From IMG/VR virus record IMGVR_UViG_3300018891_000001, positions 62,001-126,000 of that record: a DNA stretch of 64,000 bases; one strand, 5' to 3'. Both the position numbers and the translations under genes were made by a program. Position 1 is the first letter of the stretch; the number at the start of each line of letters is the position of its first letter. The notes beneath the pieces were generated by a model. It had not been told where the DNA came from and did no database searches. It saw only the letters and a program-made list of their open reading frames with translations. Below, in pieces: positions 1 through 41,797 of the stretch.

Positions 1-1
1 G

Positions 2-3000
2 GCTAATACAATCCCTGGTGGTCTGTTGCACTTGCGGGATATCTTAAATGTAAAAACCGCCCGAGAACAAGCAAGTTTTCGTATTTTTGAAAGAGGAACC
101 ATTCAAGCTTCTTTGAATGCCCATCGAGGATTTGAAATTACTGAACCTCTAAATGAAGAAGTTATCTTTGTGAATGGTAAATTTGTAAAGCTCTTTGACT
201 ATGATGCAATTAATAATAATGCTCCCTTAGAAATCTTGAATCCAAAGCGAGACATGTTCCTAACATCTTCTCAGTTTGGTTCAATGGGAAAAATGCATCG
301 TCATATGTCAGGACTTATGACAGATAACGAATCTCCTCGGAATATTATATCTTCTTTCTTTGATATCGGACGACAAGATAAAGATAGTGTCTTTATCCAA
401 GGTGTGAGTGTCTTTACGAAGTTTTTTAAAGACGATTGGGAACGAAATAAAATGAAATCATTCATTAAATACGGGATTAATACCCCAGAGGATTTTTTTG
501 AATTGAACACATATTTCCGATTGAATACAAAAGGGTTTAGTGCACGGTTATTAAATAATTTAAGAGGACACTTGCCTCGATCTATAGAGGAATTTATTGA
601 AAGGGAAAACGTTAATTTTTCAAGACAGGAAGATATCTTAAAACTATTTAGTCATATCGGTGAGAAGGAAATCAAGCGAAAGGGTAGCCCTTATACGGAG
701 CTTGTCACATTGTATCGACAATATCGTCGCAATCCAGATGCCGTATTAAATCGAAAAACGCCTGTTGGAGAAAGTAATCCGATTTTAGGGCACCATACTC
801 ATATTCAGACTGGATATGATGTGATTCATCAGCAAACCAGCTTATATCTCTTGCAAGAAATGTTGATGGCTCGGCCGGGAAAAGGGATTTATATAGACCT
901 TGCCAATCAGTTTCGAAGAGAACTGCAAGGATTGTATTACGACGGTAAAATTTTTAAAGATGAGTTACAAAAAGCAGAAGAACTATTAAATTACAGTATG
1001 TTTCGTTCTCAAGGGTTTGATTTTTTCGAGAATCGAAATGCAGCTTTAAATCGTGTTAGTTACTTATTCCAACATAATGAAGAATTCCAGGATGCAATGA
1101 GAAAAATGGTTCGGCGCACTAACCCAATGTGGGAACGCTTCTCGGAAATTCGTCCAATTAACCAAGTGGAAGATGAATATGTAGCTATTAGTAAATCAAA
1201 TATAGGAGGCATTTTTAATCGTATTATCGGATTAAATTCAAGTCTTAAAGAGCGAGCACAAGCAGCAGGAGAATTGTTCCGTCAATGGAGTCCATTTACA
1301 GGACGACGCAATATGGAAGATGTCACTCCATTTACCCTGTTTGGTGTGTATTATCCAGTATATCGCTTACAAGATGCACTCGGTAATGCAGGATTAGGAT
1401 TTTCCGATCAATCAATGGGAAATACCTTCCAAATGTTTTCTGCTCTTATGTGGAAGCGAATTTTCCCGGTGTATGGTACCGTAGAAGGCATAAAGTATAT
1501 GGATTGGAAAATGGATCAATGGACAGGAGAAGGTCTTGATGAGCGATGGGAAAACTATAAAGCACAATATCGTTTAGAGAAAGCATTGGAGCGAACACCG
1601 GAAGAAATCTATCAACTTAAACGGGAGCGAATGCTTCGACCAGGTATTGAACATTGGGAAGCTATGCCGGATGTTCACATTCCGGGAATCGGCCCTGTTG
1701 GAGCAGGAGATTTCTTAAATTTATTGTTTGCTCCGTTGATGGGTTATGCTCCTCTTCGAGAAGAAGATATGATGACTTACGATGAAACTCTCCATGATTT
1801 GTATTACGGAACGGAAGAAATCCGAAAATCCCGTTGGTGGCTCTTTGGTTCCAAGTCAGCATATCGTGGAGATCGGATTATTGAATTTGCTCCAAATTCG
1901 TTCCGTTTAGCACATAGCGATTATGAATGGACAAATACAAATGCAACCGGAGAAGAATACTGGAGTCATCATTTATTACCGACACTCGAAAATCCATTAG
2001 GAGGATTATCTTATCTTTTCGGACTTCGTGACCCATATTGGTGGGAGCGAAAACATTACTATGATCGTCCGTATTTATTAACAGGCGAATTGTTCAACCC
2101 GAACACGATGGTGTTAGGAGATATCGGCAATGCAACAATCGGACGACTCATTAAACCAGTGCAGGAAATGCATCCGGAATATTGGAGTGATCCAATCCTT
2201 ATTTATGAAAATGAAACACAGTATTTAGGGGATCGGCCAACAGAACCGGTTCGAACTCGAATTTCTCCCGGAGGTCGAATTGAACATGATGTTCTTGCCA
2301 CTCCTGCACAGTATGGAGTAACAGAGGGGATTCAGAAAATCGAAGTCGTAGATGAGGATGGAGAAGAAATCAGAGTAATGAATCCTGAAATTCTAACAAG
2401 AGGATCAAACGCAAGATATGTGATGACTCTTGAACTGGACGATGAAGGAAAAACAACAGGAGGATATGTGGCCACTGATTTGGAAGCCAATGAAAGTATT
2501 TATGTCCCTGCTAATATTGCACAAGAATTGACACTGGAAGAAGCATTCCGATATGCCGAAACAGAAAACCCACAGGGAACTCAAGTCAAAGCGGTGACGA
2601 TTTCTACTCATAATCCAAGCTATCAAACATTAGTTAGCACTCAGCCACGAGCCATGATGGATGAAGAATTTGCCTATCATCAAGACATTTTGTATCGAAA
2701 AATGGTGAACATTCAAGATCCACGAGATGGATCATGGAGATTGAGAGAAGGTTTTGAAAACTGGACAGAACCATTAGGTGTGTATAAATGGATTTTAGGA
2801 GACGAGTTGATTGGATACGACCCATATAAAGGTCAATCGGTTATTCAGCGAGCCGATGTAGCCTACAATGCATCCAATCGTTTCTGGGAATCCGAATTAG
2901 GTTCTCTTGGTTCTCAGTTGTCTGAGATTGGTCGTCGTTTTATTCGGCGGGATAGCTCACAATTAGAGAAATATAATCCTATTCGGAACACTATGCCAGA

Positions 3001-3133
3001 CTGGTTGCCAGGAGATAACTATTTTATTAATTTCCAAGTAGGAGATCCATACTCAAAGATTCCAAATGGAGAACGACGTTTACCGGGAGAGGCATATGAA
3101 GCTTTGCATGAACTTCATCCAGATGAGACTGGT
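2..3133 (+). CDS. Exon 1 (5'-partial) of a giant virion-associated protein, possibly tape-measure-like or ejected; joined to 4340-6184 after intron removal
   Basis: The frame is open from base 2 (ANTIPGGLLHLRD...), so the track start at 26 is not the true start. It ends ...ELHPDETG at GGT 3131-3133, followed directly by group I intron structure. The tape-measure-like call rests only on size and position upstream of the hub/baseplate genes. Confidence 0.7.
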
Positions 3134-4339
3134 AAAATATTTGCCTGTCTATAAACATGGCACGAATTGCTGGAAACCCCTTAGAGCCTTGCGAGCTACA
3201 ACGGAACCGGTAACGGTAAACGTGAATGCTTGAAAATCGCAAGGATTGGGCAATCAGCAGCCAAGCATCTCTGGAAACGGAGATGAAGGTTCAGAGACTA
3301 TCGAAAGCTCCTACTATATCTCACCCTGACGAAACATGATATAATGGAGCAAGTAGAGTTATTTTACAGTGATGTAAAATAACGGCGTGCCATTAATTGC
3401 AAGGAGGATGTGTATAATGAAGTCATTGCATCAAAATAAAGAATGGTTAGAAGAACAGTATTCAAAGTATGGGACATCAACAATAGCAAAAATGGTCGGA
3501 AGAAATGATAAAACAATACAATATTGGTTGAAAAAGTTTAATATACCAATGCGAACAAGAAGTGAATCAATGAAAATAACCGAAAATCGCATTCATACTG
3601 TTGATGTCGATTATTTTAAAGAAATTGATACGGAAGAGAAAGCATACTTTTTAGGTTTTCTTATGGCTGATGCGAATTTATCAATCAGAACTGATAATAA
3701 ACATGTAGAAACAAAAAGCATAGATTTGACCATTCATAAAAGTGATGTTGAAATATTGATCAAATTAAAAAATGCAATTAAATGTAGCAATGAAATTAAA
3801 CCAAAAGGAAACAATATGAGATTAGCAATATATAATACACACTTTGCTGATAACTTGATTCATTGGGGTATTGCTGCAAATAAAACAGGGCATGAAGTTT
3901 TTCCAAATATATCCGAACATTTAAAGCACCATTTTTTAAGAGGATACTTTGATGGTGATGGATGTATTACTTGGAGTAAAAACGGGAGACTTCGAGGTAA
4001 AGTTCATTTTGTTAGCGGATATGAAATGATGAAAGGTATTAAAGATTTTATTGAGAGCAAAGGTGTACAGTATACAGATAAATCATTGCATCCTAAAAAG
4101 GGAGCAAATGCTTTTGAATTAGAAACAGCTACATTGCCAAATATAGCAAGAATATATGACATAATCTATAAAGATGCTACTGTTTTTTTAACCAGAAAGA
4201 AAAAACATTTTGATGCATTTATGGAGCAATATATTAATTCTCCTATTGCAATTAAAAGATATAGTCCGACCTTATACCGAAAGGTATAAGAGGCAAGCAG
4301 AAATGACTTGCCCCTCCTTTATTGGAGAGTAACAATGTG
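3134..4339 (+). mobile_element. Group I self-splicing intron (probably subgroup IA) with endonuclease ORF in loop L8
   Basis: P1: exon ACTGGT pairs with intron GCCTGT, with U.G at the splice site. P3 is ATGGCACG 3157-3164 / CGTGCCAT 3386-3393. Core elements: P AATTGCTGGAAA 3165-3176, Q AATCAGCAGCC 3252-3262, R TTCAGAGACTA 3290-3300, S AAGATATAGTCC 4256-4267. P7 is GACTA/TAGTC with bulged A3295. P8 is TAATTGCAA 3394-3402 / TTGCAATTA 4246-4254. P9 is CTTATACC-GAAA-GGTATAAG 4271-4290. Terminal G at 4339; P10 is exon-2 AAATA with intron TATTT. Splicing restores the frame (ETG|KYG). Confidence 0.93.
3417..4289 (+). CDS. Intron-encoded LAGLIDADG homing endonuclease with N-terminal HTH-like region
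   Basis: Two LAGLIDADG-like motifs (YFLGFLMADAN and HFLRGYFDGDG) and an N-terminal HTH-like segment (TSTIAKMVGRNDKTIQYWLKKFNIP). AAGGAGG at 3401-3407 favours ATG 3417 over the track GTG 3387. Confidence 0.88.
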   Translation: MKSLHQNKEWLEEQYSKYGTSTIAKMVGRNDKTIQYWLKKFNIPMRTRSESMKITENRIHTVDVDYFKEIDTEEKAYFLGFLMADANLSIRTDNKHVETKSIDLTIHKSDVEILIKLKNAIKCSNEIKPKGNNMRLAIYNTHFADNLIHWGIAANKTGHEVFPNISEHLKHHFLRGYFDGDGCITWSKNGRLRGKVHFVSGYEMMKGIKDFIESKGVQYTDKSLHPKKGANAFELETATLPNIARIYDIIYKDATVFLTRKKKHFDAFMEQYINSPIAIKRYSPTLYRKV

Positions 4340-6184
4340 AAATACGGAGCTTTTGATAAATTTAAAATTTTGGCAGATGTGGCTCCGTGGAGTGATGAAT
4401 ATAAATTCTGGAGTCAATATCTCCTAGATAACTTAGAAGATCCGGAATTGCGACAAGAAGCAGCCGAAATCCGCAGACAAGTCTCCATGCGGAAACAAAA
4501 ATATGATTTTCAACCATACCGATTTAAAGGACAAAATCTCGTATATGAAGAAGTAACTGTAAAAAAGTTTTTAGATGATTACACGTTTTTAACTGAAGAA
4601 TTCGGAGATCAGCCAATCCGAATTGCCGGAGTAGAATATCGCAAAAAAGCATCAGGAGTACTGCAAAATTACTTCCAAGAAGGAGACAAAGTGGTTATTG
4701 GAGTTGCCGCTGATCCAACGCAACGAATTGCTAATGACACTTACGGAACGATGCGAGCCGTTATTTTTAATGAATTAGGAAATATCAATCAAGATATTAT
4801 TCGTCGTGGTCGCATGGTCGAAAACCTGAATGATTTCTCTCCTGCGGGCGTGCATGCTCGTTTTACTCCGGAGGAAATTCGAAGAGGGGCACGATGGGAA
4901 ACAGTAGCTCATGCAAGTACACCATTGAATACCAAGTTCTTGCAAGTGCGAACCGCTTTAGAGGAATACGAACGAGATCAGATTTATGGAAAAGACTGGG
5001 CAACATGGGAAAACTTCATGCTAAGTGACTATGTTATCCCAACCTTGCAAGGATTAGGACGTTTTGATAGTCCATTGTGGTCCATGGCAGCAGGAGCCGT
5101 AACCGGACTTGTTCTTGGTCGCTTCTTTTTACGAGGAGGCCGACCAACCAAAATTGCTGCAATATTAGGAGGATTGTATGGTTTAGGCTCTAATTTCTTC
5201 TTTAAATACTATGAAAATAAGCATGGTGAAGCGTGGATTCCAGAGCGTCGAAGAATTGAACATGAAATCAATGAGTATTTCGATATCTTAAAATACCTCA
5301 AATACGAGGGACTCTATCAAAAAGCAAGAGAAGAAATTGCTCATGCCACGGGATATGATATTGAAGATTTGGCTCAATTGATTCAAAACCAAAAAGAATT
5401 AAACAAGCAACGAAAAGAGGAACTGGAGGCAGAAAAGAAACGGCTTTATATTGAGCAGCCAAAAGGATGGGAAAAGCGCAGAGAAGAGATCAATCAAGAA
5501 CTAGAAACAATTTCTTTAGATTGGGAAAATCTCTATTTGCCAGAAGCCTTCTTGCAAGCATTACAGTATCGACAAGAGCGTGATACCACATTATATGCGA
5601 TAGATCCATATGGTGATCGTTTGCAAGTCATGAGAGCTTTTCCGTACAAAGACAAATGGTTCTTTAATGCGTTTGTTGAAGCGAATCAAGAAGAACGAGA
5701 ACGTATTTTGGAACTAGTTCCTGAAAACCAACGCCGGATTTATAAGGCTATTTGGGGAATGGGGCTTGAACCTCAAAAGCCTCTAGAGTATTACATGCAA
5801 AAATACCGAATCCCTGATTGGACTTGGGAAGGCTGGCGACCGGAATATAATTTGGAAGACATTAAAGTCAAAGTAGTTCAAGAATATGGATTAGATTTGT
5901 CTGATTTCAATTTCTGGGAGGATGATGTAGAAGCCTCTCAATACGTTCCAGACTTGCATCCAGATGGAAATGAGTTTAAAGGTGAACCGGCTTCCAACTT
6001 TACTGGCTTTCAAGCATTGCGACAAAATCTGATTCATATTCTACAAGGATATGGCTTGCAAGATGTTCGTGTTACCGTATATCCATCCACTGGCTCTGAA
6101 ACCAATGTTCATTTCACCTATACTGAAGACCGAAGTGAAGAGATTGAAGAACATCTCCGCAAGTATGGAAGCCGATATGTGTAA
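4340..6184 (+). CDS. Exon 2 of the giant virion-associated protein; contains a degenerate SNase-like region and a Gly/Ala-rich hydrophobic hairpin
   Basis: In frame with exon 1 after splicing (KYGAFDKFKILADVAPWS...). SNase-like pattern at ~4547-4815; hydrophobic WSMAAGAVTGLVLGRFF...IAAILGGLYGLGSNFFF at ~5078-5205. Confidence 0.75.
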   Translation, partial: KYGAFDKFKILADVAPWSDEYKFWSQYLLDNLEDPELRQEAAEIRRQVSMRKQKYDFQPYRFKGQNLVYEEVTVKKFLDDYTFLTEEFGDQPIRIAGVEYRKKASGVLQNYFQEGDKVVIGVAADPTQRIANDTYGTMRAVIFNELGNINQDIIRRGRMVENLNDFSPAGVHARFTPEEIRRGARWETVAHASTPLNTKFLQVRTALEEYERDQIYGKDWATWENFMLSDYVIPTLQGLGRFDSPLWSMAAGAVTGLVLGRFFLRGGRPTKIAAILGGLYGLGSNFFFKYYENKHGEAWIPERRRIEHEINEYFDILKYLKYEGLYQKAREEIAHATGYDIEDLAQLIQNQKELNKQRKEELEAEKKRLYIEQPKGWEKRREEINQELETISLDWENLYLPEAFLQALQYRQERDTTLYAIDPYGDRLQVMRAFPYKDKWFFNAFVEANQEERERILELVPENQRRIYKAIWGMGLEPQKPLEYYMQKYRIPDWTWEGWRPEYNLEDIKVKVVQEYGLDLSDFNFWEDDVEASQYVPDLHPDGNEFKGEPASNFTGFQALRQNLIHILQGYGLQDVRVTVYPSTGSETNVHFTYTEDRSEEIEEHLRKYGSRYV

Positions 6185-6199
6185 AAGGGAGTGGATTAC

Positions 6200-9100
6200 A
6201 TGAATGAACCATGGAACCAAACACCAGAAGATATCCGAGTGAATATTGTATTACCTAAATCAAAAGATTTAAAAGTCGTTGCCGTTTCCGATCCGGTCTA
6301 TTATCAAGACCGGACGGATCCCGAATATGAAAAACGAATTACTCGTCATATTGATTTTCTGAATCGGCAATCGGCAATTTTAGAACGGGATAAAAACTCG
6401 TTGGCTCTTGAAATGCAAGAACTCATGCGTAAAAAAGAGACGATAATTTATGATGGACAACGAGTATATCGCTTGTTTCATTCCTTAAATCAACGACACA
6501 ATCAACAAACTTTAGAGCTATTTGAAGAGTTTTATCGTAGCCTAAAAAATAATCAAAATCATTATATTTTTGATATCGAAACATTTGGAGATGTTCATGA
6601 TCGACAAAAACCATACAGCATTTCCGAGATTTCAATTAATGAATTTGACCGACAAGGCAATTTGGTTCGCAAAGGCTATAACACCGTTTTGCGACAAGAT
6701 CAAAAAACAGTAGATTATTTGCAGCAACTTATTGATGATATTCGAAAAGACAAATATGCTTACAATCGTTTAGAAGATTGGGAAAAACGGAGTCTAGTGG
6801 ATTTAATGCGTTATGCAAGCTATATGAGTGAGTATGATGAACATGCGTTTTCTCATAACCTTAAAACTCAAGAAATCCAACATCATTCCATTATTAAATC
6901 GGTGTTTGACCACCAAGACCAAGTGCATCATGGAAAGGTATTACGTAATATTGACCAATATCTTTTGTATATGCAATCAGGACTTGATTATCTAAAAAAA
7001 CATGGTACACCAGTGCAAACAGCATTAAAACAGATCGAAAAATTATTTCAAGAGAATGCGGATCGTTTTTTCCTTACTTATAACGGGTTAGTCTTTGACT
7101 GGCCAGTGTTAAAAGCTTTTGCAGAAAAACATGGGGTCACTTTGTCATCTATTAAACATCTTGACTACTTAAATGCCATTCGAACCGTATTTTCGGACTC
7201 TGATGTATTAAAACGAAGAATCAATCCAGATTTTCAGCGGAGTGCATACAGTAAAGATAAACTAGCTGCTATGCGTCAAGCATTAAATTTAGAAACACAA
7301 GATGAAGCGCACAACGCACAAATTGATACACATGACACAGCAAAAGTGATAGCTGCTACCTATGAACATCTTCATCAAGAAATCCAAAATTCGAAATTTC
7401 CGATTCGAGAAGGATTCAACTATCATCCTACGTATTTAACATGGAATGATGAGCCTCTTCGTCACGGACAAAAACTATTTGCCATTGGAGGAGCAATGGC
7501 CGTACAAGATGGAGACGAATCTTTCCGAGTGACCTTAGATGAAAATGGAAAATGGGTGCCTGTCACTAATGATTTCAATAAAACCGTCATTAATAGTAAA
7601 ACCTTCTATGAATTTGCTGGTATGCAGAAATTAGAAGAAGGACAGCTGGCATTTCGATTTTTTGATCCAGACCGAAATGAATATGCCTATATTGTTCGTA
7701 GCGGAGAACATGCATTTCAGGAACTGCAAGACTTTGTACAAAGTCGTTTTTACAATTGGGATGGATTAGACCCTCAATATCAACGAGATATCTTGCACGC
7801 TGCTGAAGCAGACCGAGCCCGTCGTCGTTATCAGCGTTTCTTTAGTATGGATGGAGCCGGCAAAGGATTGGCAATTATAGATGGGGAAATCGTCGAAAAA
7901 GGGACAGCAGGTTTTTCTGGCTTAAAACGAATGATTGCCAATGCCGAAATCATGAAAACTCATTTAGAAAGTAAAGGAGCCCAGTATCGTGCCAAAGTAG
8001 AAGAACTCATAGCACAAGGAATGAGTCGAAATCAAGCCAAAAGAGAAGCACGAAAAATACGGGCACATCAATTGCCAAATCACCTAGATTTTGAAAGTTT
8101 ATGGGATGAAAGTCGGCAGAAATACGTTATTAATGAAGCAGAAAGAAAGCAATTCTTTAAAATGTATAAGCGTTTAATCGATGAACTTCCATATCTAAAA
8201 GAGGTAGTAGAAACCATTGATCAAGAATTTGCAGAAGAAATTCAACAAGCAGCTGCTATCAAAGATAACCGAAAACGACGCAGGGCTCTTATGGAGATTA
8301 ATCAAAAACGAGATCAAGCCCTTATGAATTACTATCGATACATGACAGATGCCGTGGGAGAACCTGAACAAGAAAGGACATTAAAAGAATTTGAAAATCG
8401 GCGTTTGGCTTTTTATGACCCGGAAGTAGACGATTATCGCACCTTGGATTTTACCACTGTCAAAAGTGCAAGAGATAGTTTATATCAATATGCTCGACGT
8501 GGCACAAAAGAAAGCCGTAATCAGCAAAAAGTGATGAAAGAGCGGTTAGATTTCCTTTTTCGTAATTTACAAACTCAGCATATCATTACTCCAGGTCAAT
8601 ACTCTTATTACTCCGATGTATTATGGAACACCGATTCGGTATGGCATGCAGCAGGAGAGATTGCTATCAATATGAGACAACGAAATAACGGAAAATATGA
8701 AACTACCTTAACAGAGCCATCCATGATTCAAAATCAAAATATTCAGCAGCTTACCAAAGAACAAAATCGACAGTTTATTCAAAGAGCTATCGAGGACACT
8801 CGTAATGCTCAATTGATTATCAATATGGACTCAGCAACAGGTAAGAAACTGATATTAGGTGAAGAAATAAGAAAAACATTAGAGATTTTGGATCAACAGC
8901 GTTTCTCACGACTAGAACCAAAAAACTATGAAGCATTAGAAGAATTGATTGCAAGTATTCGTAAAACTGATCGTACGAAACAAATTGCATTAGTAATGGA
9001 TACTCATTCTAATGATGGATTAATGAAAGCCTATGTCTATAACGGAAAAGATAGTATAACAGTTCGCAATCAATTAGCTCGAGGAACAACTCCTACACAA

Positions 9101-12100
9101 GCGTTAGAAATCGTCATGCCTTTGATTAATCAGGCCGGCACACATAAAGTAGGAGGCTTGGTATTAAATGCACATAATATAGCTGTTCGAGAAGGAAAAA
9201 ATATCGAGTTAATTTCAAGTGCCCAACATATTGCACGAGGATATGCTGATAGAATGGGATCTATTATGAAGGTATTCAATGAAGGAGATATAGAATGGGC
9301 CAATACACTCGCACGACGTACTCTTCGTAATCAAATTGAAAGCATGTCAGGAATCCAGAGAAATATGGAATTCGGAGAAAACGACACATATGTATGGGCG
9401 CAAAATCAGTCCGACATGTTAAAACAAGCACACGTCAAGCTAGGTAATGCTATGGTAGAAGATTTGTTTTACAACGGCTTTGAAGGTGTGCGACTAACAG
9501 AAAAAGATTTCTACGATCCGGATGATGTGTTTATAGATGACGGACATGGAAACCGAATCTTGCGCAAGGGTGTAACTTTAGAAGATGTAAAAATGGAAAC
9601 CAGCCACAAGATGCTGATGCTCATGCCTAAATGGGCAGAGGAACGGTTAAAGATTCCTTTATTTACATCTTCTGTGAAAGCTGAGCACGTATCCAAAGCG
9701 ATTTTATCAATGGAGGACATTCGCCAACTGATTCCTTATGGTACATTTTACAATCACGGCCGTGATAACGCTGTACAATATATGAATGCTTATCTAATTA
9801 ACTCTCAAACAGAAGAACGTTTAAGAAATATTAAAGGAGTCAGTCGGGATAGTTTATTGAAAACTCCTCGCCAACTAGAATATGAGTCTATTCAGCCTAA
9901 CAAAGTCAGCATGAATATGAGAATTGCTTATATGACGCAAGATGAACTACGTAAACGTGTAGAACAAATGATAAAAGATTCAAGAGGGCAACAACTTCTT
10001 TCCGAATTAGGATTTTTAGATGAGACAGGAAAACTTCAGTATGAAAAACTACCACGACTGTATGAGCAGCAGGGCATTATTGCTAAAGATTTAATGGATG
10101 CGTTAGAAGTCAATAATGAAAAGCGATATGACAAAGGAAAACGATTTGAATTAGAAAAAGGGTTGCAAATAGGTAGCACTATTCAACCAGGTCAGTTATT
10201 AGGATACCGAATCCATGATAATGGATACCGAGAAGCTATACGTTATGAAGGCACCAAAGTAGCCCAGCTTATTGATGGTGTGGAAGAAGGACGAGATTTA
10301 ATTGTACGTTGGCAAACCCAACCATTTAAATTTATGCTTGACGGCGAAAAAATGACCGATTCCCCCGTAGATCGTCGATTTATTGAATATCTTACTGGTC
10401 GAAATGACATTGTAGGGATTATTAACCCAGATGTGGCGAAACACCACGACTTTGGAATGTTAATGTCGGGGGAAGCTAGATTGCTAGCTGAAGAAATTAA
10501 AAAACTAAGCCCATCCAAACAAAAAACCGCTAGAAAAATTATTGAAAATGGTGGTATTGGGCTCAAGTGGAATCAAGAAATGGGCGGGTTCATTGATCAT
10601 AGTTTTGATTTGCAAATTGCTCGGGAACAATTTGATAAAGTATTTGAGCAACTCAACAAAGCCAAAATTCGTATTTCTCCAATAACTCCAACAGGATTGC
10701 GTATGGGTATTTTAGAAGGCCGTATGTCCAAAGTAGCCAATTATAGTAAAGTGATCGACCACAACGGAAGGCAAGTGATTGGCTATGAAGAAGGATATAA
10801 TGCTGAAACTGGCGAATACGAAGTTCGTAAAGTATATGCAGATGGCAGAGATGGAGTACAATGGGGACACCGAGAGATGGGGGTACTAAAGAGCTATGGG
10901 TTAGAGAAAACCTATCAACATGTTCATCAAATTATGTTGGAACAAGCTCAGCAAACTCATCGTCTCCAAGAAACTAGAGCCGTTGCTGAATCATTGCGAT
11001 ATCTGACACATGAGGATCGTATTCAAACAGAGGCATTGAACATAGAAGACTTTGACTCTCTTCCAGAAATGTATCGTAGTGAGAATACGTACAAAGGAAC
11101 GATTTTTGATCGTGAAAAAGTAAAAAGTTTAGTAAGCCAGTATAAAAATCATAATGCCATGAATGAGCATGGTTTCTGGCTAGAATTGCCTTCAGTAAAA
11201 CGTCCTGATGGTAAGCTCGATAAAGTTACGATCCGCATGGACGAGACAGGGACATTAAAAGAAATTGATAAAATCTTTATTCCATTTACGAAACTGGAAG
11301 GGGCACATGGCGATATCCATTTGCGGGATTTGCAAAAACAAATTGCTCGTATTTATGAAAAAGCGGAAGAAGTGCAACGAGCAACCAGTCTTCAAGATGC
11401 ACGAATGGCCCATCAAGAATTGCAGCAAGCGGTTCGAGGATATGTCAAACAATCATTTAAAGAACTCACCTCTTCTAAAGGTATGCTATTTGGAGATGTC
11501 TTTAAAACCCATATGAATAATTCGGCTTCAGGACTTTTTAAACTCATGGATTATCATACGTCTCAAAAAGTGATGGAAAAATGGGGAGAAGGAGAGTACA
11601 CGATTATTTCTGAAGATACTGCCAAGAAGATGGGCATTTACGATCGATTAAAAGCCGGAAACGAATTGTATGTAGCAAATGTCCGTTACCCAACATTCCA
11701 TGATGGAGCCATGCAGTTTACAAAACTCAAAATGGCCGACTGGGTAAAAGAGGGAGAGTTTCATACTACATCCTTTGCATCCATGCTTCAAAATGCAGAC
11801 TCTGACGGAGACTACTCGCATATTGTCTTTGTTGATGATAAAGACATTCAAGAAGAATGGAGAAGGGCACATGATCAAACACGACAAAAATTTGAAGAAC
11901 GATGGAGAGCACATTTAGAAAAAACGGACCCAACACACCCATCATATCAAGAAGCAAAACCGGTAAGTATTCGAGATACGGAAGCAAAGGGAGTAGCTGA
12001 TGAGCAATGGAAACAGTTTGTTTTGAAGCGAATCGGAAACAATGATCAAGAAACAGCATCTAAAATCGGTAAGATGACCATCGGACGAGCTTCCAACTTA

Positions 12101-13105
12101 AACTTATTTATTCGTCAAGTGGCAGACCGGTACTATGCCGATAACCCGGAAATTAACAATAAAATAAAAGAATTTGGTCGGGGACTCGAACAAAAGCTCA
12201 TCGACGCAAAGCACGGAGCTGAACCAGCGGGCTTAAAAATGATTGATGCCATTTATGCAGGAAATTGGGAGAAAGCCTTTGAAATTGATAAGCAATATTT
12301 TGATGGCATGTTCCAAAAGGACTATTATATGAACGTGGTTGCTCAGGAAATGCCAATGGCACTTACTCGAATGAGAGAGGGACTTCGCACAGCAGGCTTT
12401 AAATTTGGAACAAGTACCGGAATCAATGCCAACTATGGAGTTCAGAAGTTAATCGATTTATTATACGGACAAGCAGATCCACAAGAGTATGGGGGAGATA
12501 ATAAAGCATTAGCCATGTGGCATAAATATCTTCAAAGCGAAGGCATGAACATAGATCTTCATGGAGAACAACAAGCTCCTATGCCTATTCAACGATTAAC
12601 AACAACTCCAATGAAAGAGCGAATAGATGAAGGAAAAGGAATATTAAATCGAGCTCGCAATACGTTGAGTGATGCTATTGGAGGAAGTATTTCGGGTGTC
12701 AAAGGGAAGATTAGTCAACTCTTTGATAGTATCCAAAACATGAATCCAAAAACCGCTGCCCTCTTGGGAGCAGGTCTTGCAGTAACGGGTATTGCAGGGT
12801 ACAATATTCTTAACAGTGATAAACCTGTAATGCATTACAATAATGAAAGTCAAGAAAGAAAACGAGAACCTCGTCCGGCTTTGCAAGTAGATATGAATGA
12901 TTACCATTCAACACAAAATGCATCCATTCATATTGAGGCTTCCGGAAGGAAAGTAGGTTCTGATCAAATGTCTCATATGGTGGCTCAAGGAATGAGAGAG
13001 TCCGGCATGAATGCAGGACCAACCCGCATTTCTGTGACCCATCGGGATAATACTCAACAATTAAACCGAGTTTGGTATCGGGATAAAGTACGAGAGAATA
13101 TTTAG
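6200..13105 (+). CDS. Putative virion single-subunit two-barrel RNA polymerase fused to an N-terminal DEDDh 3'-5' exonuclease, with a C-terminal hydrophobic segment
   Basis: Beta-prime-like NVRYPTFH (11678-11701) and NADSDGD (11792-11812). Beta-like YEQQGII, IQPGQLLG, FKFMLDGEK (Lys codons 10328 and 10349) and DIVGIINP (10406-10429). Exo I FDIET (D 6572, E 6578), Exo II YNGLVFD (D 7097), Exo III HNAQID (H 7310, D 7325). C-terminal AALLGAGLAVTGIAGYNIL. RBS AAGGGAG 6185-6191 favours ATG 6200 over GTG 6191. Confidence 0.75.
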   Translation: MNEPWNQTPEDIRVNIVLPKSKDLKVVAVSDPVYYQDRTDPEYEKRITRHIDFLNRQSAILERDKNSLALEMQELMRKKETIIYDGQRVYRLFHSLNQRHNQQTLELFEEFYRSLKNNQNHYIFDIETFGDVHDRQKPYSISEISINEFDRQGNLVRKGYNTVLRQDQKTVDYLQQLIDDIRKDKYAYNRLEDWEKRSLVDLMRYASYMSEYDEHAFSHNLKTQEIQHHSIIKSVFDHQDQVHHGKVLRNIDQYLLYMQSGLDYLKKHGTPVQTALKQIEKLFQENADRFFLTYNGLVFDWPVLKAFAEKHGVTLSSIKHLDYLNAIRTVFSDSDVLKRRINPDFQRSAYSKDKLAAMRQALNLETQDEAHNAQIDTHDTAKVIAATYEHLHQEIQNSKFPIREGFNYHPTYLTWNDEPLRHGQKLFAIGGAMAVQDGDESFRVTLDENGKWVPVTNDFNKTVINSKTFYEFAGMQKLEEGQLAFRFFDPDRNEYAYIVRSGEHAFQELQDFVQSRFYNWDGLDPQYQRDILHAAEADRARRRYQRFFSMDGAGKGLAIIDGEIVEKGTAGFSGLKRMIANAEIMKTHLESKGAQYRAKVEELIAQGMSRNQAKREARKIRAHQLPNHLDFESLWDESRQKYVINEAERKQFFKMYKRLIDELPYLKEVVETIDQEFAEEIQQAAAIKDNRKRRRALMEINQKRDQALMNYYRYMTDAVGEPEQERTLKEFENRRLAFYDPEVDDYRTLDFTTVKSARDSLYQYARRGTKESRNQQKVMKERLDFLFRNLQTQHIITPGQYSYYSDVLWNTDSVWHAAGEIAINMRQRNNGKYETTLTEPSMIQNQNIQQLTKEQNRQFIQRAIEDTRNAQLIINMDSATGKKLILGEEIRKTLEILDQQRFSRLEPKNYEALEELIASIRKTDRTKQIALVMDTHSNDGLMKAYVYNGKDSITVRNQLARGTTPTQALEIVMPLINQAGTHKVGGLVLNAHNIAVREGKNIELISSAQHIARGYADRMGSIMKVFNEGDIEWANTLARRTLRNQIESMSGIQRNMEFGENDTYVWAQNQSDMLKQAHVKLGNAMVEDLFYNGFEGVRLTEKDFYDPDDVFIDDGHGNRILRKGVTLEDVKMETSHKMLMLMPKWAEERLKIPLFTSSVKAEHVSKAILSMEDIRQLIPYGTFYNHGRDNAVQYMNAYLINSQTEERLRNIKGVSRDSLLKTPRQLEYESIQPNKVSMNMRIAYMTQDELRKRVEQMIKDSRGQQLLSELGFLDETGKLQYEKLPRLYEQQGIIAKDLMDALEVNNEKRYDKGKRFELEKGLQIGSTIQPGQLLGYRIHDNGYREAIRYEGTKVAQLIDGVEEGRDLIVRWQTQPFKFMLDGEKMTDSPVDRRFIEYLTGRNDIVGIINPDVAKHHDFGMLMSGEARLLAEEIKKLSPSKQKTARKIIENGGIGLKWNQEMGGFIDHSFDLQIAREQFDKVFEQLNKAKIRISPITPTGLRMGILEGRMSKVANYSKVIDHNGRQVIGYEEGYNAETGEYEVRKVYADGRDGVQWGHREMGVLKSYGLEKTYQHVHQIMLEQAQQTHRLQETRAVAESLRYLTHEDRIQTEALNIEDFDSLPEMYRSENTYKGTIFDREKVKSLVSQYKNHNAMNEHGFWLELPSVKRPDGKLDKVTIRMDETGTLKEIDKIFIPFTKLEGAHGDIHLRDLQKQIARIYEKAEEVQRATSLQDARMAHQELQQAVRGYVKQSFKELTSSKGMLFGDVFKTHMNNSASGLFKLMDYHTSQKVMEKWGEGEYTIISEDTAKKMGIYDRLKAGNELYVANVRYPTFHDGAMQFTKLKMADWVKEGEFHTTSFASMLQNADSDGDYSHIVFVDDKDIQEEWRRAHDQTRQKFEERWRAHLEKTDPTHPSYQEAKPVSIRDTEAKGVADEQWKQFVLKRIGNNDQETASKIGKMTIGRASNLNLFIRQVADRYYADNPEINNKIKEFGRGLEQKLIDAKHGAEPAGLKMIDAIYAGNWEKAFEIDKQYFDGMFQKDYYMNVVAQEMPMALTRMREGLRTAGFKFGTSTGINANYGVQKLIDLLYGQADPQEYGGDNKALAMWHKYLQSEGMNIDLHGEQQAPMPIQRLTTTPMKERIDEGKGILNRARNTLSDAIGGSISGVKGKISQLFDSIQNMNPKTAALLGAGLAVTGIAGYNILNSDKPVMHYNNESQERKREPRPALQVDMNDYHSTQNASIHIEASGRKVGSDQMSHMVAQGMRESGMNAGPTRISVTHRDNTQQLNRVWYRDKVRENI

Positions 13106-41754: not shown

Positions 41755-41797
41755 TTCCCCTTTGACTTTTTCATCAATATGAAAAGGAGGTCATCTT

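What the first reader, a model, noticed from the sequence alone, without database searches (positions are those of the whole stretch)
6560..7330. Intact DEDDh 3'-5' exonuclease fused to the putative RNA polymerase
Seen: complete Exo I (FDIET), Exo II (YNGLVFD) and Exo III (AHNAQID) motifs at the N-terminus of the polymerase-like protein, with an unusually long (~170-aa) Exo I-II spacer. Known: DEDDh domains are DnaQ/RNase T/oligoribonuclease-type nucleases and usually partner DNA polymerases; cellular RNAPs proofread by Gre/TFIIS-assisted cleavage instead. Inference: an RNAP with a covalently linked exonuclease could proofread or trim transcripts, process the injected DNA end, or degrade host or defence nucleic acids on entry. 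I am not aware of this architecture being characterised.
Basis: partly seen in the sequence, partly recalled or inferred. Interest (0 to 1): 0.78.

Follow-up and report, generated by a model that had tools for sequence, protein, structure and literature searches.

The report
Exonuclease-fused giant phage RNA polymerase
A 2,300-residue protein in the tail-gene block of a Bacillus-type jumbo phage joins an apparently active DnaQ-type 3'-5' exonuclease to a single-chain cellular-type RNA polymerase core, a conserved combination that I did not find described and whose purpose is still open.

Summary
ORF 6191..13105 (+, 2304 aa; likely start ATG 6200) has Exo I (FDIET), Exo II (YNGLVFD) and Exo III (AHNAQID) at the stated coordinates. 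An AlphaFold model places them in a DnaQ fold (ExoI Z 16.4, Pol III epsilon Z 14.3) with about 90 extra, mostly helical residues.

D128, E130, D303, H374 and D379 are invariant in 84/84 full-length relatives. The fusion is found in 83 of 85 full-length relatives, so it is not an artefact.

Residues ~1127-2114 fold as a fused beta-beta' two-barrel RNA polymerase core (pLDDT 90; 569 Foldseek hits, the top-ranked RNAP large subunits). It carries RxPTxH...NADSDGD, and every member checked has the Asp triad.

The gene lies between the tail chaperones plus an ORF145-like giant gene and the baseplate hub. This is the slot called "tape measure" in phage 0305phi8-36. Homologues in phages KLEB27-3 and WH1 are annotated as virion proteins. 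The genome also encodes a separate YonO-like polymerase.

Best reading: an ejected multi-enzyme protein, comparable to P23-45 gp96 and crAss gp66, carrying an added exonuclease. The exonuclease's substrate is unresolved. Distant relatives keep this domain without the polymerase.

The parts
6191..13105 (+). Whole gene: 2304-codon ORF (probable start ATG 6200) with the order exonuclease, unassigned domains, beta-like module, beta'-like module, hydrophobic segment, conserved C-terminal tail
   Evidence: 22 full-length homologues at 34-70% identity. 85 representative clusters, nearly all 2100-2900 aa.
6545..7390 (+). DEDDh (DnaQ-like) 3'-5' exonuclease domain, aa ~119-400
   Evidence: VIA-align: ExoI Z 16.4, DinG exo 14.9, 3'hExo 14.5, Pol III epsilon 14.3. 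Foldseek gives ExoI, oligoribonuclease and REXO2 at probability 1.0.
6569..6583 (+). Exo I motif FDIET (D128, E130)
   Evidence: invariant in 84/84 members
6692..7060 (+). Insertion between Exo I and Exo II (aa ~168-290), mostly helical, containing the conserved 'RSLVDLMRY' stretch
   Evidence: Secondary structure. 189 of 279 residues align to ExoI. Y208 and G264 are nearly invariant. Partly recognisable in Moorella phage CDS0027.
7079..7099 (+). Exo II motif YNGLVFD (N298, D303)
   Evidence: D303 in 84/84 and N298 in 82/84. Matches the PolB Exo II motif in the PDB profile search.
7307..7327 (+). Exo III motif AHNAQID (H374, D379), the H-x4-D form that defines DEDDh
   Evidence: invariant in 84/84
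7391..9568 (+). Unassigned, confidently folded globular region (aa ~401-1126) with conserved basic motifs (D541, R544, R545, K579, R580)
   Evidence: pLDDT mostly above 85; conservation. No structural assignment, because the exonuclease matches fill the hit list. Only weak language-model leads to LPD and MuF_C 'polyvalent protein' domains.
9569..10957 (+). RNAP beta (second-largest subunit)-like module with a double-psi barrel, aa ~1127-1589
   Evidence: VIA-align: AR9 nvRNAP 7s00_C Z 14.9, phiKZ nvRNAP 7ogp_C 14.2, Pol I A135 14.1, X. oryzae beta 13.6
10325..10360 (+). FKFMLDGEKMTD: candidate beta-type lysine pair (K1380, K1387), followed by the NPDVAKHHDF motif at 10424-10453
   Evidence: K1387 and T1389 are nearly invariant or invariant. 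hhalign places the stretch on E. coli beta 1061-1077 (GDKMAGRHGNKG) and on NPLGVPSRMN, but only at E 0.25. Coordinates.
10997..12532 (+). RNAP beta'/Rpb1-like module (clamp-helix-like hairpin, switch-2-like motif, catalytic double-psi barrel, following helices), aa ~1603-2114
   Evidence: VIA-align to Rpb1 and beta' chains Z 10-11.6. Foldseek PDB gives 569 hits at E<=1e-3; the listed top-ranked ones are RNAP large subunits, mostly Rpb1/beta'. hhalign to E. coli beta' 293-481, E 4.7e-5.
11684..11701 (+). RYPTFH: equivalent of beta' 'RAPTLH' (R1832, P1834)
   Evidence: In 80/86 sequences of the global alignment, and invariant in the 63-sequence alignment A4. Aligned to beta' by hhalign.
11792..11812 (+). 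NADSDGD: metal-binding Asp triad D1870, D1872, D1874
   Evidence: The members missed by the first regular expression also carry DxDGD. Weak Pfam RNA_pol_Rpb1_2 hits at this site in 3 of 4 distant members.
12755..12811 (+). Gly/Ala-rich hydrophobic segment AALLGAGLAVTGIAGYNIL
   Evidence: A2197, Y2204, N2205 and L2207 are invariant among close homologues. Below a strict Kyte-Doolittle 1.6 cut-off. The only region with weak similarity to 0305phi8-36 ORF146.
12920..13102 (+). Conserved C-terminal tail (…DNTQQLNRVWYRD…), possibly the anchor to the tail or hub
   Evidence: Invariant D2286, N2287, T2288, L2291, R2293, W2295, Y2296 among close homologues. In 0305phi8-36, only the last ~60 residues of ORF146 aligned to its BtI1/BwK1 counterparts (PMC2147016).
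13111..19554 (+). Downstream neighbour: baseplate hub with a lysozyme-like/SLT domain (orthologue of 0305phi8-36 ORF147)
   Evidence: Pfam PF13702 and PF01464; phrog_20474; tblastn; BLASTP
1..6184 (+). Upstream neighbour: ORF145-like giant tail-module gene in two pieces (to 3154, and 4322-6184), separated by a LAGLIDADG ORF
   Evidence: BLASTP to Moorella CDS0026 and 0305phi8-36 ORF145; ORF map

Best explanation
The gene encodes a virion-delivered, multi-enzyme ('polyvalent') protein of a 0305phi8-36-like jumbo phage of Bacillaceae. It is built into the tail or ejection apparatus through its C-terminal hydrophobic segment and conserved tail. It enters the cell with the leading end of the DNA.

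Its C-terminal half is a single-chain beta-beta' RNA polymerase. This polymerase would transcribe the first (pre-early) genes without host RNAP, and the separate YonO-like polymerase would take over later, as in P23-45.

Its N-terminal DEDDh domain is a catalytically competent, Mg-dependent 3'-5' exonuclease. Only a few copies can arrive per virion, so it must act locally and on a 3'-OH end.

My first choice for the substrate (about 0.35) is the 3' end of the enzyme's own transcript. The nuclease would trim RNA extruded from a backtracked or mis-extended complex and so rescue the few polymerase molecules available. That would replace Gre/TFIIS, and it follows the general rule that a DEDDh domain fused to a polymerase edits that polymerase's product. 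My second choice (about 0.25) is processing of the 3' end of the entering phage DNA.

Shown: both domain identities, conservation of both active sites, conservation of the fusion, and the gene's position. Inferred: virion delivery, catalytic activity, the order in which the two polymerases act, and the substrate.
For: - Exonuclease. The motifs are present. The five catalytic residues are invariant in 84/84 members. The predicted fold matches ExoI at Z 16.4 and Pol III epsilon at Z 14.3.
- Polymerase. The model has pLDDT 90.4 and pTM 0.86. Foldseek finds 569 PDB hits at E<=1e-3, the top-ranked being RNAP large subunits. The beta-like part reaches Z 14.9 and the beta'-like part Z 11.6. An AFDB single-chain 'DNA-directed RNA polymerase' cluster matches at E 5e-25, TM 0.54, over model residues 17-1031. 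R1832, P1834, D1870, D1872 and D1874 are the only positions 90% or more conserved in a global alignment of 86 sequences. hhalign to E. coli beta' gives E 4.7e-5, covering a clamp helix, switch 2 and NADFDGD.
- Fusion. It is present in 83 of 85 full-length members, and all members checked keep DxDGD.
- Tail-module position. The order is chaperone pair, ORF145-like gene, this gene, hub. The same order holds for a very distant member on a 182-kb scaffold.
- Virion association. KLEB27-3 gp034 and WH1 gp095 are family members (HMM E 1e-87 to 1e-205). They are deposited as 'structural protein' and 'virion structural protein'. The positional counterpart 0305phi8-36 gp146 was found in virions by mass spectrometry.
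- Second polymerase. The genome has a PF05183 ORF of 1159 aa.
- Precedents. P23-45 has a TMP-fused vRNAP plus an nvRNAP (PMC10770324). crAss gp66 is another. N4-type vRNAPs are fused to other effectors (PMC5512222).
Against: - No biochemistry exists for any family member.
- The 'structural protein' labels are depositor annotations, and I could not check their basis. No paper on these phages was found.
- Moorella phage CDS0027 has a homologous, complete DEDDh domain (E 1e-22). 0305phi8-36 ORF146 has a homologous domain (E 3e-9; Exo I clear, Exo III not recognised). Both sit in the same genomic slot and lack any DxDxD or RNAP-core similarity. The nuclease can therefore exist and persist without the polymerase, which weakens the transcript-editing reading.
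- Two-barrel RNAPs can cleave backtracked RNA at their own active site (general knowledge), so an extra nuclease is not obviously required.
- The two halves were modelled separately, so the position of the nuclease relative to the secondary channel is unknown.
- Both halves are predicted to be compact and globular. How 250 kDa passes through a tail tube is unexplained.
Confidence: 0.55

Rival explanations
1. The exonuclease is an autonomous module that processes the entering phage DNA. Sitting in the tail lumen next to the leading DNA end, it resects the 3' strand once it meets cytoplasmic Mg2+. This could expose the terminal repeat for annealing and circularisation, or it could convert the end into a long 5' tail that the host AddAB/RecBCD-type nuclease cannot load on. 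The polymerase is a separate passenger on the same ejected polypeptide.
For: A homologous exonuclease domain occupies the same tail-module slot in relatives that have no polymerase. The slot is next to the hub, where the DNA end exits. The top structural neighbours include DNA-specific enzymes: ExoI, a DNA-polymerase-embedded exonuclease domain (9qpc) and Pol III epsilon. The low copy number favours a single local substrate (inference). Polyvalent proteins commonly combine independent early-acting modules (PMC5512222).
Against: The true genome ends are unknown, because the record's 'terminal repeat' is only 61 bp and is probably an assembly overlap. No end-protection or annealing role is known for a DEDDh enzyme in any phage (from memory). 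A pure end-binding role would not require all five catalytic residues to stay invariant. RNA-specific DEDDh enzymes (3'hExo, REXO2, RNase T) score almost as well.
Confidence: 0.25
2. The exonuclease is an injected counter-defence or host-takeover effector. It would destroy host or defence nucleic acids, or linear oligonucleotide signals, at the moment of entry, independently of transcription.
For: It follows the polyvalent-protein logic of delivery with the DNA. DEDDh enzymes include oligoribonucleases, and DEDDh domains also occur in defence systems, as in Cap18 and Cas2-DEDDh among the structural neighbours. Language-model leads for aa 400-1100 point weakly to LPD and MuF_C domains, which are typical of polyvalent proteins.
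Against: There is no PADLOC or NCBIfam match. A handful of molecules per cell is a poor way to clear bulk nucleic acid (inference). Strict conservation across more than 80 clusters, with no domain shuffling, is unlike the rapid turnover usual for counter-defence modules. The atlas scores are below 0.9, so they are leads only.
Confidence: 0.13
3. The protein is primarily the tail tape measure protein, as annotated for the equivalent 0305phi8-36 gene. The enzyme-like motifs would be relics or structural elements.
For: It shares the slot of 0305phi8-36 ORF146, 'hypothetical tape measure protein'. It is similar in size and has a C-terminal hydrophobic segment and a conserved tail. P23-45 shows that a tape measure can carry a polymerase.
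Against: The 0305phi8-36 assignment rested mainly on length, and the gene is one gene removed from the chaperones (PMC2147016). The ORF145-like gene lies directly after the chaperones and has an N-terminal transmembrane segment. Both halves of this protein are predicted, at pTM 0.81-0.86, to be compact multi-domain folds and not an extended helical ruler. Both catalytic sites are invariant, so they are not relics.
Confidence: 0.05
4. The two-barrel module is a DNA polymerase (functionally PolD-like), and the DEDDh domain is its classical proofreader.
For: DEDDh domains normally partner DNA polymerases. Archaeal PolD is a two-barrel polymerase that works with a separate 3'-5' exonuclease (general knowledge; PMC7281927 listed). 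The Asn of NADxDGD is not conserved across the family, which also shows K and A at that position.
Against: The listed structural matches (the top 50 of each search) are almost all RNA polymerases, and no PolD chain appears among them. The arginine equivalent to beta' R425, which from memory selects ribo-NTPs, is invariant. A switch-2-like motif and a clamp-helix-like hairpin align to beta'.
Confidence: 0.02

Closest known systems
P23-45 gp96, the tape-measure-fused virion RNA polymerase of a Thermus phage (with nvRNAP gp64); PMC10770324
   Same: A giant tail-module protein that carries a single-chain two-barrel RNAP with a DxDGD motif. It has a hydrophobic segment elsewhere in the chain. A second, non-virion two-barrel RNAP is encoded in the same genome. 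The fold is shared (8h2n Z 6.8; the nvRNAP homologue P74 gp62 Z 8.9).
   Different: In gp96 the polymerase is N-terminal; here it is in the C-terminal half. gp96 has a metallopeptidase domain, and the paper never mentions an exonuclease. gp96 is clampless and belongs with the YonO/QDE-1-like clade, whereas this core matches multisubunit-type beta and beta' best. No sequence similarity is detectable.
crAss-like phage phi14:2 gp66 virion RNA polymerase (PDB 6VR4)
   Same: About 2,200 residues, virion-packaged, single-chain and two-barrel, encoded among tail and cargo genes. The fold match is Z 7.3 over 459 residues.
   Different: gp66 has a DFDID motif and QDE-1-like affinities. The preprint does not contain the word 'nuclease'. 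Its neighbour carries a zincin protease, not a nuclease.
Multisubunit RNAPs of jumbo phages (AR9 and phiKZ nvRNAP and vRNAP) and cellular beta/beta'
   Same: These are the best structural matches of the beta-like module (7s00_C Z 14.9, 7ogp_C Z 14.2). The beta'-type motifs RxPTxH, NADxDGD, the switch-2-like motif and a clamp helix align to E. coli beta'.
   Different: Those enzymes are split into four or five polypeptides. This one is a single chain with beta and beta' fused, plus about 1,100 N-terminal residues that include the exonuclease. It reaches no Pfam threshold for any RNAP domain.
DnaQ-like DEDDh exonucleases (E. coli ExoI, Pol III epsilon, RNase T, oligoribonuclease/REXO2, 3'hExo, DinG-exo)
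   Same: It has the Exo I, II and III residues with H-x4-D, and an RNase H-like fold with Z 13-16.
   Different: It is embedded in a 2,300-residue protein. It carries an insertion of about 90 residues between Exo I and Exo II with its own conserved motif, and additional invariant residues E146 and D325. It is below threshold in Pfam, NCBIfam and PADLOC.
Polyvalent proteins, including N4-type virion RNAPs fused to peptidase, ART, lysozyme or RNase domains (PMC5512222)
   Same: A very large multi-domain protein encoded among late genes, probably delivered with the DNA, that combines a polymerase with another enzyme.
   Different: N4-type polymerases are T7-like (right-hand fold), not two-barrel. 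A DEDDh partner is not described there: 'DEDD' occurs 0 times and 'exonuclease' once.
Coronavirus nsp14 ExoN working with the RdRp (functional analogy only, from memory)
   Same: A DEDDh 3'-5' exonuclease associated with an RNA-synthesising polymerase.
   Different: The polymerase fold is unrelated, the complex is non-covalent, and the template is RNA. No homology is claimed or tested.

Membership tests
DEDDh (DnaQ-like) 3'-5' exonuclease superfamily | Exo I motif with D-x-E | tested here: met
   FDIET at 6569-6583; D128 and E130 in 84/84 members
DEDDh (DnaQ-like) 3'-5' exonuclease superfamily | Exo II motif with a conserved Asp | tested here: met
   YNGLVFD; D303 in 84/84 and N298 in 82/84. 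The profile matches PolB Exo II.
DEDDh (DnaQ-like) 3'-5' exonuclease superfamily | Exo III motif H-x4-D (the 'h' subtype, not Y-x3-D) | tested here: met
   AHNAQID; H374 and D379 in 84/84
DEDDh (DnaQ-like) 3'-5' exonuclease superfamily | RNase H-like alpha/beta fold superposable on solved members | tested here: met
   Predicted model only: ExoI Z 16.4 at rmsd 2.8 over 189 residues, epsilon Z 14.3. TM by target is 0.55-0.69 to oligoribonucleases.
DEDDh (DnaQ-like) 3'-5' exonuclease superfamily | Metal-dependent 3'-5' exonuclease activity, and its substrate | not testable with these tools
   Needs an enzyme assay
Two-barrel (beta/beta'-type) RNA polymerases | beta'-type double-psi barrel with a DxDxD metal site | tested here: met
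   NADSDGD. D1870, D1872 and D1874 are invariant in A4, and all members carry DxDGD. Fold matches.
Two-barrel (beta/beta'-type) RNA polymerases | Invariant Arg and Pro upstream of the triad (Rpb1 R446 and P448, per PMC2919709) | tested here: met
   RYPTFH; R1832 and P1834 are invariant. Aligned to beta' RAPTLH.
Two-barrel (beta/beta'-type) RNA polymerases | beta-type barrel supplying two basic residues and one acidic residue (Rpb2 K979, K987, D837) | tested here: inconclusive
   The structural match to beta/Rpb2 is strong (Z 13-15). K1380 and K1387 are conserved, but the sequence alignment to E. coli beta is weak (E 0.25) and puts K1380 one residue out of register. The acidic residue is not assigned; E1292 is a candidate.
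Two-barrel (beta/beta'-type) RNA polymerases | Switch-2 and funnel elements said to mark DNA-dependent enzymes (PMC2919709) | tested here: inconclusive
   A switch-2-like motif, SKGMLF…SASG, aligns to beta' KGKQGRF…YSGRS. Helices follow the barrel. The funnel was not mapped explicitly.
Two-barrel (beta/beta'-type) RNA polymerases | Template-dependent RNA synthesis | not testable with these tools
   Needs an enzyme assay
YonO / eukaryotic RdRP family (Pfam PF05183) | Match to PF05183 | tested here: not met
   This protein has no hit. A different ORF of the genome does (34.8 bits against a cut-off of 23.8).
Tail tape measure proteins | Gene immediately downstream of the tail chaperone pair and upstream of the hub | tested here: inconclusive
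   It lies upstream of the hub, but it is separated from the chaperones by the ORF145-like gene.
Tail tape measure proteins | Extended, largely helical ruler that can lie in the tail lumen | tested here: not met
   Both halves are predicted to be compact mixed alpha/beta multi-domain bodies, pTM 0.81 and 0.86. This is prediction only.
Tail tape measure proteins | Protein length proportional to tail length | not testable with these tools
   No virion images exist for this phage
Polyvalent proteins (Iyer et al. 2017) | Several effector or enzyme domains in one polypeptide, encoded among late/virion genes and delivered with the DNA | tested here: inconclusive
   The multi-enzyme architecture and late-gene context are met. 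Delivery rests on annotations of homologues and on the 0305phi8-36 gp146 mass spectrometry. The signature LPD and MuF domains are only weak leads.

The most novel reading that the evidence does not exclude
A DNA-dependent, cellular-type (two-barrel) RNA polymerase uses a covalently attached DEDDh exonuclease to edit or rescue its own transcripts. The nuclease would digest the RNA 3' end extruded on backtracking or after misincorporation, in place of Gre/TFIIS-stimulated cleavage at the polymerase active site. This would be the first dedicated proofreading or anti-arrest exonuclease for DNA-templated transcription. It would be a counterpart of the DNA polymerase epsilon-type editor and of coronavirus ExoN.
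Probability: 0.3. Interest if true: 0.9.

Novelty: new variant of a known kind. Interest (0 to 1): 0.72.

Why it matters
Virion-delivered two-barrel RNA polymerases are a recent discovery (crAss gp66 and P23-45 gp96). This family adds a third, independent lineage, found in Bacillaceae jumbo phages. Its core looks closer to multisubunit beta and beta' than to the YonO/QDE-1 group. It also has the first universally conserved nuclease partner.

If the nuclease edits transcripts, that would change the textbook view that DNA-dependent RNAPs proofread only through their own active site. If it acts on the entering DNA end, it defines a new kind of ejected DNA-processing enzyme. That enzyme would be conserved across a very old phage lineage, including members that lack the polymerase.

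Either way the question can be tested directly, because three isolated Bacillus phages carry the protein: KLEB27-3, WH1 and Edson. The result also calls for re-examining the 'tape measure' annotation of the equivalent 0305phi8-36 gene.

Tried and rejected
1. Assembly or read-through artefact. Rejected: the frame is uninterrupted, and the same length and domain order recur in 22 close homologues and in more than 60 distant clusters.

2. Single-sequence searches. Megablast and tblastn of the query against 50,697 phage records found nothing. PHROGs, NCBIfam and PADLOC gave nothing useful, and phmmer against PDB sequences found nothing. These misses reflect divergence only. Family HMMs then recovered KLEB27-3 gp034 and WH1 gp095, and tblastn with gp034 also found Edson.

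3. Direct BLASTP to 0305phi8-36 ORF145/146 and Moorella CDS0026/27. There was no significant similarity. Only the exonuclease domain is recognisable, and only with the family HMM.

4. The idea that the exonuclease strips one strand to make a single-stranded template for a sigma-less polymerase. I considered this and dropped it. A 3'-5' nuclease leaves a 5' tail, on which transcription would run outward toward the DNA end. Core RNAPs prefer 3' tails (from memory). The record's ends are not the real genome ends, since the repeat is only 61 bp.

5. Membership in the YonO/RdRP family. Not met: a different gene carries PF05183.

6. Looking for the YonO-like gene in KLEB27-3, WH1 and Moorella phage. 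Nothing was found, and the tool warns that an empty answer shows nothing.

7. Assigning aa 401-1126. The structural hit lists were filled by exonuclease matches. The language-model search gave only sub-0.9 leads.

8. Testing kinship to the C. glutamicum NCgl1702 beta::beta' fusion mentioned in PMC2919709. I could not fetch that sequence with these tools.

9. A full-length structure prediction to place the nuclease relative to the RNAP channels.

Full report
**Setting**

The window is bases 62001-126000 of a 215,870-bp virus record. Its 'terminal repeat' is only 61 bp exact, so the record ends are probably an assembly overlap and not the true genome ends. Nearly all genes of the window are on the + strand at about 37-40% G+C.

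The neighbour downstream of the target (13111-19554) is a 2147-aa baseplate hub with lysozyme-like and SLT domains. It matches phrog_20474 end to end. Its nearest database relatives are the hub proteins of Moorella phage MTATph1, Bacillus phages vB_BceM_WH1, vB_BauM_KLEB27-3 and Edson, and 0305phi8-36. The phage is therefore a distant member of the 0305phi8-36-like jumbo myoviruses.

**The observation**

ORF 6191..13105 is a single 2304-codon frame. The likely start is ATG 6200, behind AAGGGAG.

Single-sequence family searches barely detect the domain. Pfam RNase_H_2 gives E 0.0015, below its cut-off. PHROGs, NCBIfam and PADLOC give nothing.

The large protein database holds 22 full-length homologues at 34-70% identity. 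They come from contigs that are mostly 70-225 kb, several from Bacillus and Priestia assemblies, and all are hypothetical proteins. An exhaustive profile search with aa 1101-2200 found 85 representative clusters, nearly all of 2100-2900 residues.

An iterated HMM of the exonuclease domain finds it near the N-terminus of 83 of the 85 full-length sequences. The two exceptions are shorter sequences. D128, E130, D303, H374 and D379 are invariant in 84/84. In a 58-sequence MAFFT alignment reaching 16-20% identity to the query, the invariant columns are exactly D128, E130, G133, E146, N298, D303, D325, H374 and D379.

An AlphaFold2 model of aa 1-1100 (pLDDT 88.6, pTM 0.81) superposes over aa 119-400 on DEDDh nucleases:
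- ExoI, Z 16.4
- an exonuclease domain embedded in a DNA polymerase (9qpc), Z 15.2
- S. aureus DinG exo, Z 14.9
- 3'hExo, Z 14.5
- Pol III epsilon, Z 14.3
- REXO2, RNase T, Cas2-DEDDh and Cap18, with lower scores

Only 189 of the 279 residues in that span align to ExoI. This confirms an insertion of about 90 residues between Exo I and II. It is mostly helical and has its own conserved stretch around R200-Y208.

**The rest of the protein**

The model of aa 1101-2200, built from a 63-sequence alignment (A4), is confident: pLDDT 90.4, pTM 0.86. Foldseek returns 569 PDB matches at E<=1e-3, and the top-ranked ones are RNAP large subunits.

A search independent of Foldseek splits the model into two parts. 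Residues 1127-1589 match second-largest subunits: AR9 nvRNAP Z 14.9, phiKZ nvRNAP 14.2, Pol I A135 14.1, bacterial beta 13.6, ASFV and vaccinia. Residues 1603-2114 match Rpb1 and beta' at Z 10-11.6. The single-chain enzymes QDE-1 (11.3), RDR2 (11.1), P74 gp62 (8.9), crAss gp66 (7.3) and P23-45 gp96 (6.8) align across both parts.

The best AlphaFold-DB cluster is a 1052-residue single-chain 'DNA-directed RNA polymerase', aligned over model residues 17-1031 (E 5e-25, TM 0.54).

At the sequence level, the only positions conserved at 90% or more in a global alignment of 86 family members are R1832, P1834, D1870, D1872 and D1874. Members missed by a strict regular expression still carry DxDGD. hhalign of the family profile against E. 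coli beta' gives E 4.7e-5 over beta' 293-481. It pairs a clamp helix, the switch-2 motif, RAPTLH with RYPTFH, and NADFDGD with NADSDGD. Three of four distant members give weak Pfam RNA_pol_Rpb1_2 hits at this site.

The beta-side lysines are probably K1380 and K1387 in FKFMLDGEKMTD, followed by an NP…G motif similar to beta's NPLGVPSRMN. The sequence alignment there is weak (E 0.25), so I score that feature as inconclusive. Overall the 'putative RNA polymerase' is a real beta-beta' fused two-barrel core, closer in shape to multisubunit-type enzymes than to YonO.

**Genomic context**

The gene order in the genome is as follows:
- two small tail-chaperone homologues
- a 1400-aa ORF
- a LAGLIDADG ORF
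- a 620-aa ORF
- the 2304-aa gene
- the hub

The 1400-aa and 620-aa ORFs together are colinear with 0305phi8-36 ORF145 and Moorella CDS0026. The target therefore occupies the slot of 0305phi8-36 ORF146, which is annotated as a hypothetical tape measure protein and was found in virions by mass spectrometry.

That annotation rested mainly on length. The authors noted that the chaperones are one gene removed from it and that only the last ~60 residues align with its counterparts in the related BtI1/BwK1 elements (PMC2147016). The same gene order holds for a very distant family member on a 182-kb metagenomic scaffold.

KLEB27-3 gp034 (2434 aa, 'structural protein') and WH1 gp095 (2515 aa, 'virion structural protein') are family members by HMM (E 1e-87 to 1e-205). 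Both keep DEDDh and RxPT…DxDGD. Edson has one too. I could not find papers on these phages, so the virion labels are depositor annotations.

The genome also encodes a separate 1159-aa YonO/RdRP-like protein (PF05183, above its cut-off). It is the counterpart of 0305phi8-36 orf99.

**A finding that bears on function**

The slot-mates in more distant relatives lack the polymerase but keep the nuclease. Moorella CDS0027 has VLDLETT, GQNVVGFD and HEALTD. Pfam RNase_T scores above its cut-off, and the family exonuclease HMM gives E 1e-22.

0305phi8-36 ORF146 has YLDIETTG at aa 1222 and matches the family exonuclease HMM at E 3e-9. Its Exo III motif is not recognisable. Neither protein has any DxDxD motif or any similarity to the RNAP-core HMM.

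The nuclease is thus the most widely retained enzymatic module of this tail-module gene. The polymerase is specific to one large clade.

**Interpretation**

The closest characterised systems are the virion RNAPs that travel with the DNA. P23-45 gp96 is fused to the tape measure and acts before a second, non-virion two-barrel RNAP. crAss gp66 is another. N4-type polymerases sit within 'polyvalent proteins' that combine several early-acting enzymes. None of these papers describes an exonuclease partner, and full-text searches found none.

I therefore read the protein as an ejected polyvalent protein with four parts: the nuclease, unassigned domains, the beta-beta' RNAP, and a C-terminal hydrophobic segment with a conserved tail that may anchor it in the tail. 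By analogy with P23-45, the polymerase would make the first transcripts and the YonO-like enzyme would follow. This part is inferred, not shown.

For the nuclease, few copies can be delivered, so a local 3' end is the likely substrate. Across biology, DEDDh domains fused to polymerases edit the polymerase's product. Both active sites and the fusion are invariant throughout the family. On that basis I rank trimming of backtracked or mis-extended transcript 3' ends first, at about 0.35. The existence of polymerase-less relatives with the same nuclease argues for an autonomous role on the entering DNA end (about 0.25) or in counter-defence (about 0.13).

The pure tape-measure reading is unlikely, because both halves are predicted to be compact globular bodies and both active sites are under strict conservation. 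A DNA-polymerase reading is very unlikely on the fold matches and the invariant arginine.

**Limits**

- All structural statements rest on predictions.
- The two halves were modelled separately, so the position of the nuclease relative to the RNAP channels is unknown.
- aa 401-1126 remain unassigned.
- No activity, virion content or expression timing was measured.
- The relation to the NCgl1702-type beta::beta' fusions mentioned in PMC2919709 could not be tested.

**Verdict**

This is a real, conserved and apparently undescribed architecture. It is a new variant of the virion two-barrel RNAP theme with a DEDDh exonuclease attached. It can be tested directly in three isolated Bacillus phages. 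Interest 0.72.

Noticed in passing
window 1-6184 (exon-like pieces to 3154 and 4322-6184; intervening ~3134-4342; LAGLIDADG ORF 3387-4289): The ORF145-like giant tail-module gene is split in two, colinear with a single gene in Moorella phage and 0305phi8-36. The gap holds a LAGLIDADG homing-endonuclease ORF. It is flanked by sub-threshold Rfam group I intron matches at 3124-3458 (39.7 bits, E 3e-8) and 4177-4289. This is probably a homing-endonuclease-bearing group I intron inside a virion protein gene. KLEB27-3 shows the same three-piece layout (gp031/gp032/gp033).
   Followed up: partly
own genome G000:C1 ~14188-17667, minus strand (locus L004:313-3792), outside the window: A separate 1159-aa YonO/RdRP-like two-barrel polymerase (Pfam PF05183, 34.8 bits, above its cut-off). 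The phage therefore encodes two unrelated-looking two-barrel polymerases.
   Followed up: partly
L003:6573-14183 (0305phi8-36 ORF146, aa ~1200-1500) and L002:6730-10656 (Moorella phage CDS0027, aa ~842-1070): The 'hypothetical tape measure' of 0305phi8-36 and its Moorella counterpart contain a homologous DEDDh-type exonuclease domain but no polymerase motifs. It is complete in Moorella; in 0305phi8-36 Exo III is not recognisable. In Moorella a transposase gene follows directly, so that gene may be disrupted.
   Followed up: partly
own genome ends (G000:C1:1-61 and 215810-215870): The 'direct terminal repeat' of the record is only 61 bp exact, which looks like an assembly overlap. The physical genome ends, and therefore which end enters the cell first, are unknown.
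   Followed up: yes
window 7391-9568 (aa 401-1126 of the target): About 700 confidently folded residues between the exonuclease and the polymerase have no assigned fold or function. They include a family-wide conserved basic motif (D541, R544, R545, K579, R580). Language-model leads point weakly to LPD and MuF_C domains of polyvalent proteins.
   Followed up: partly
window 36790-46807 and 50606-56170: Three further very large ORFs (1654, 1669 and 1854 aa) lie downstream in the structural module. I did not examine them.
   Followed up: no
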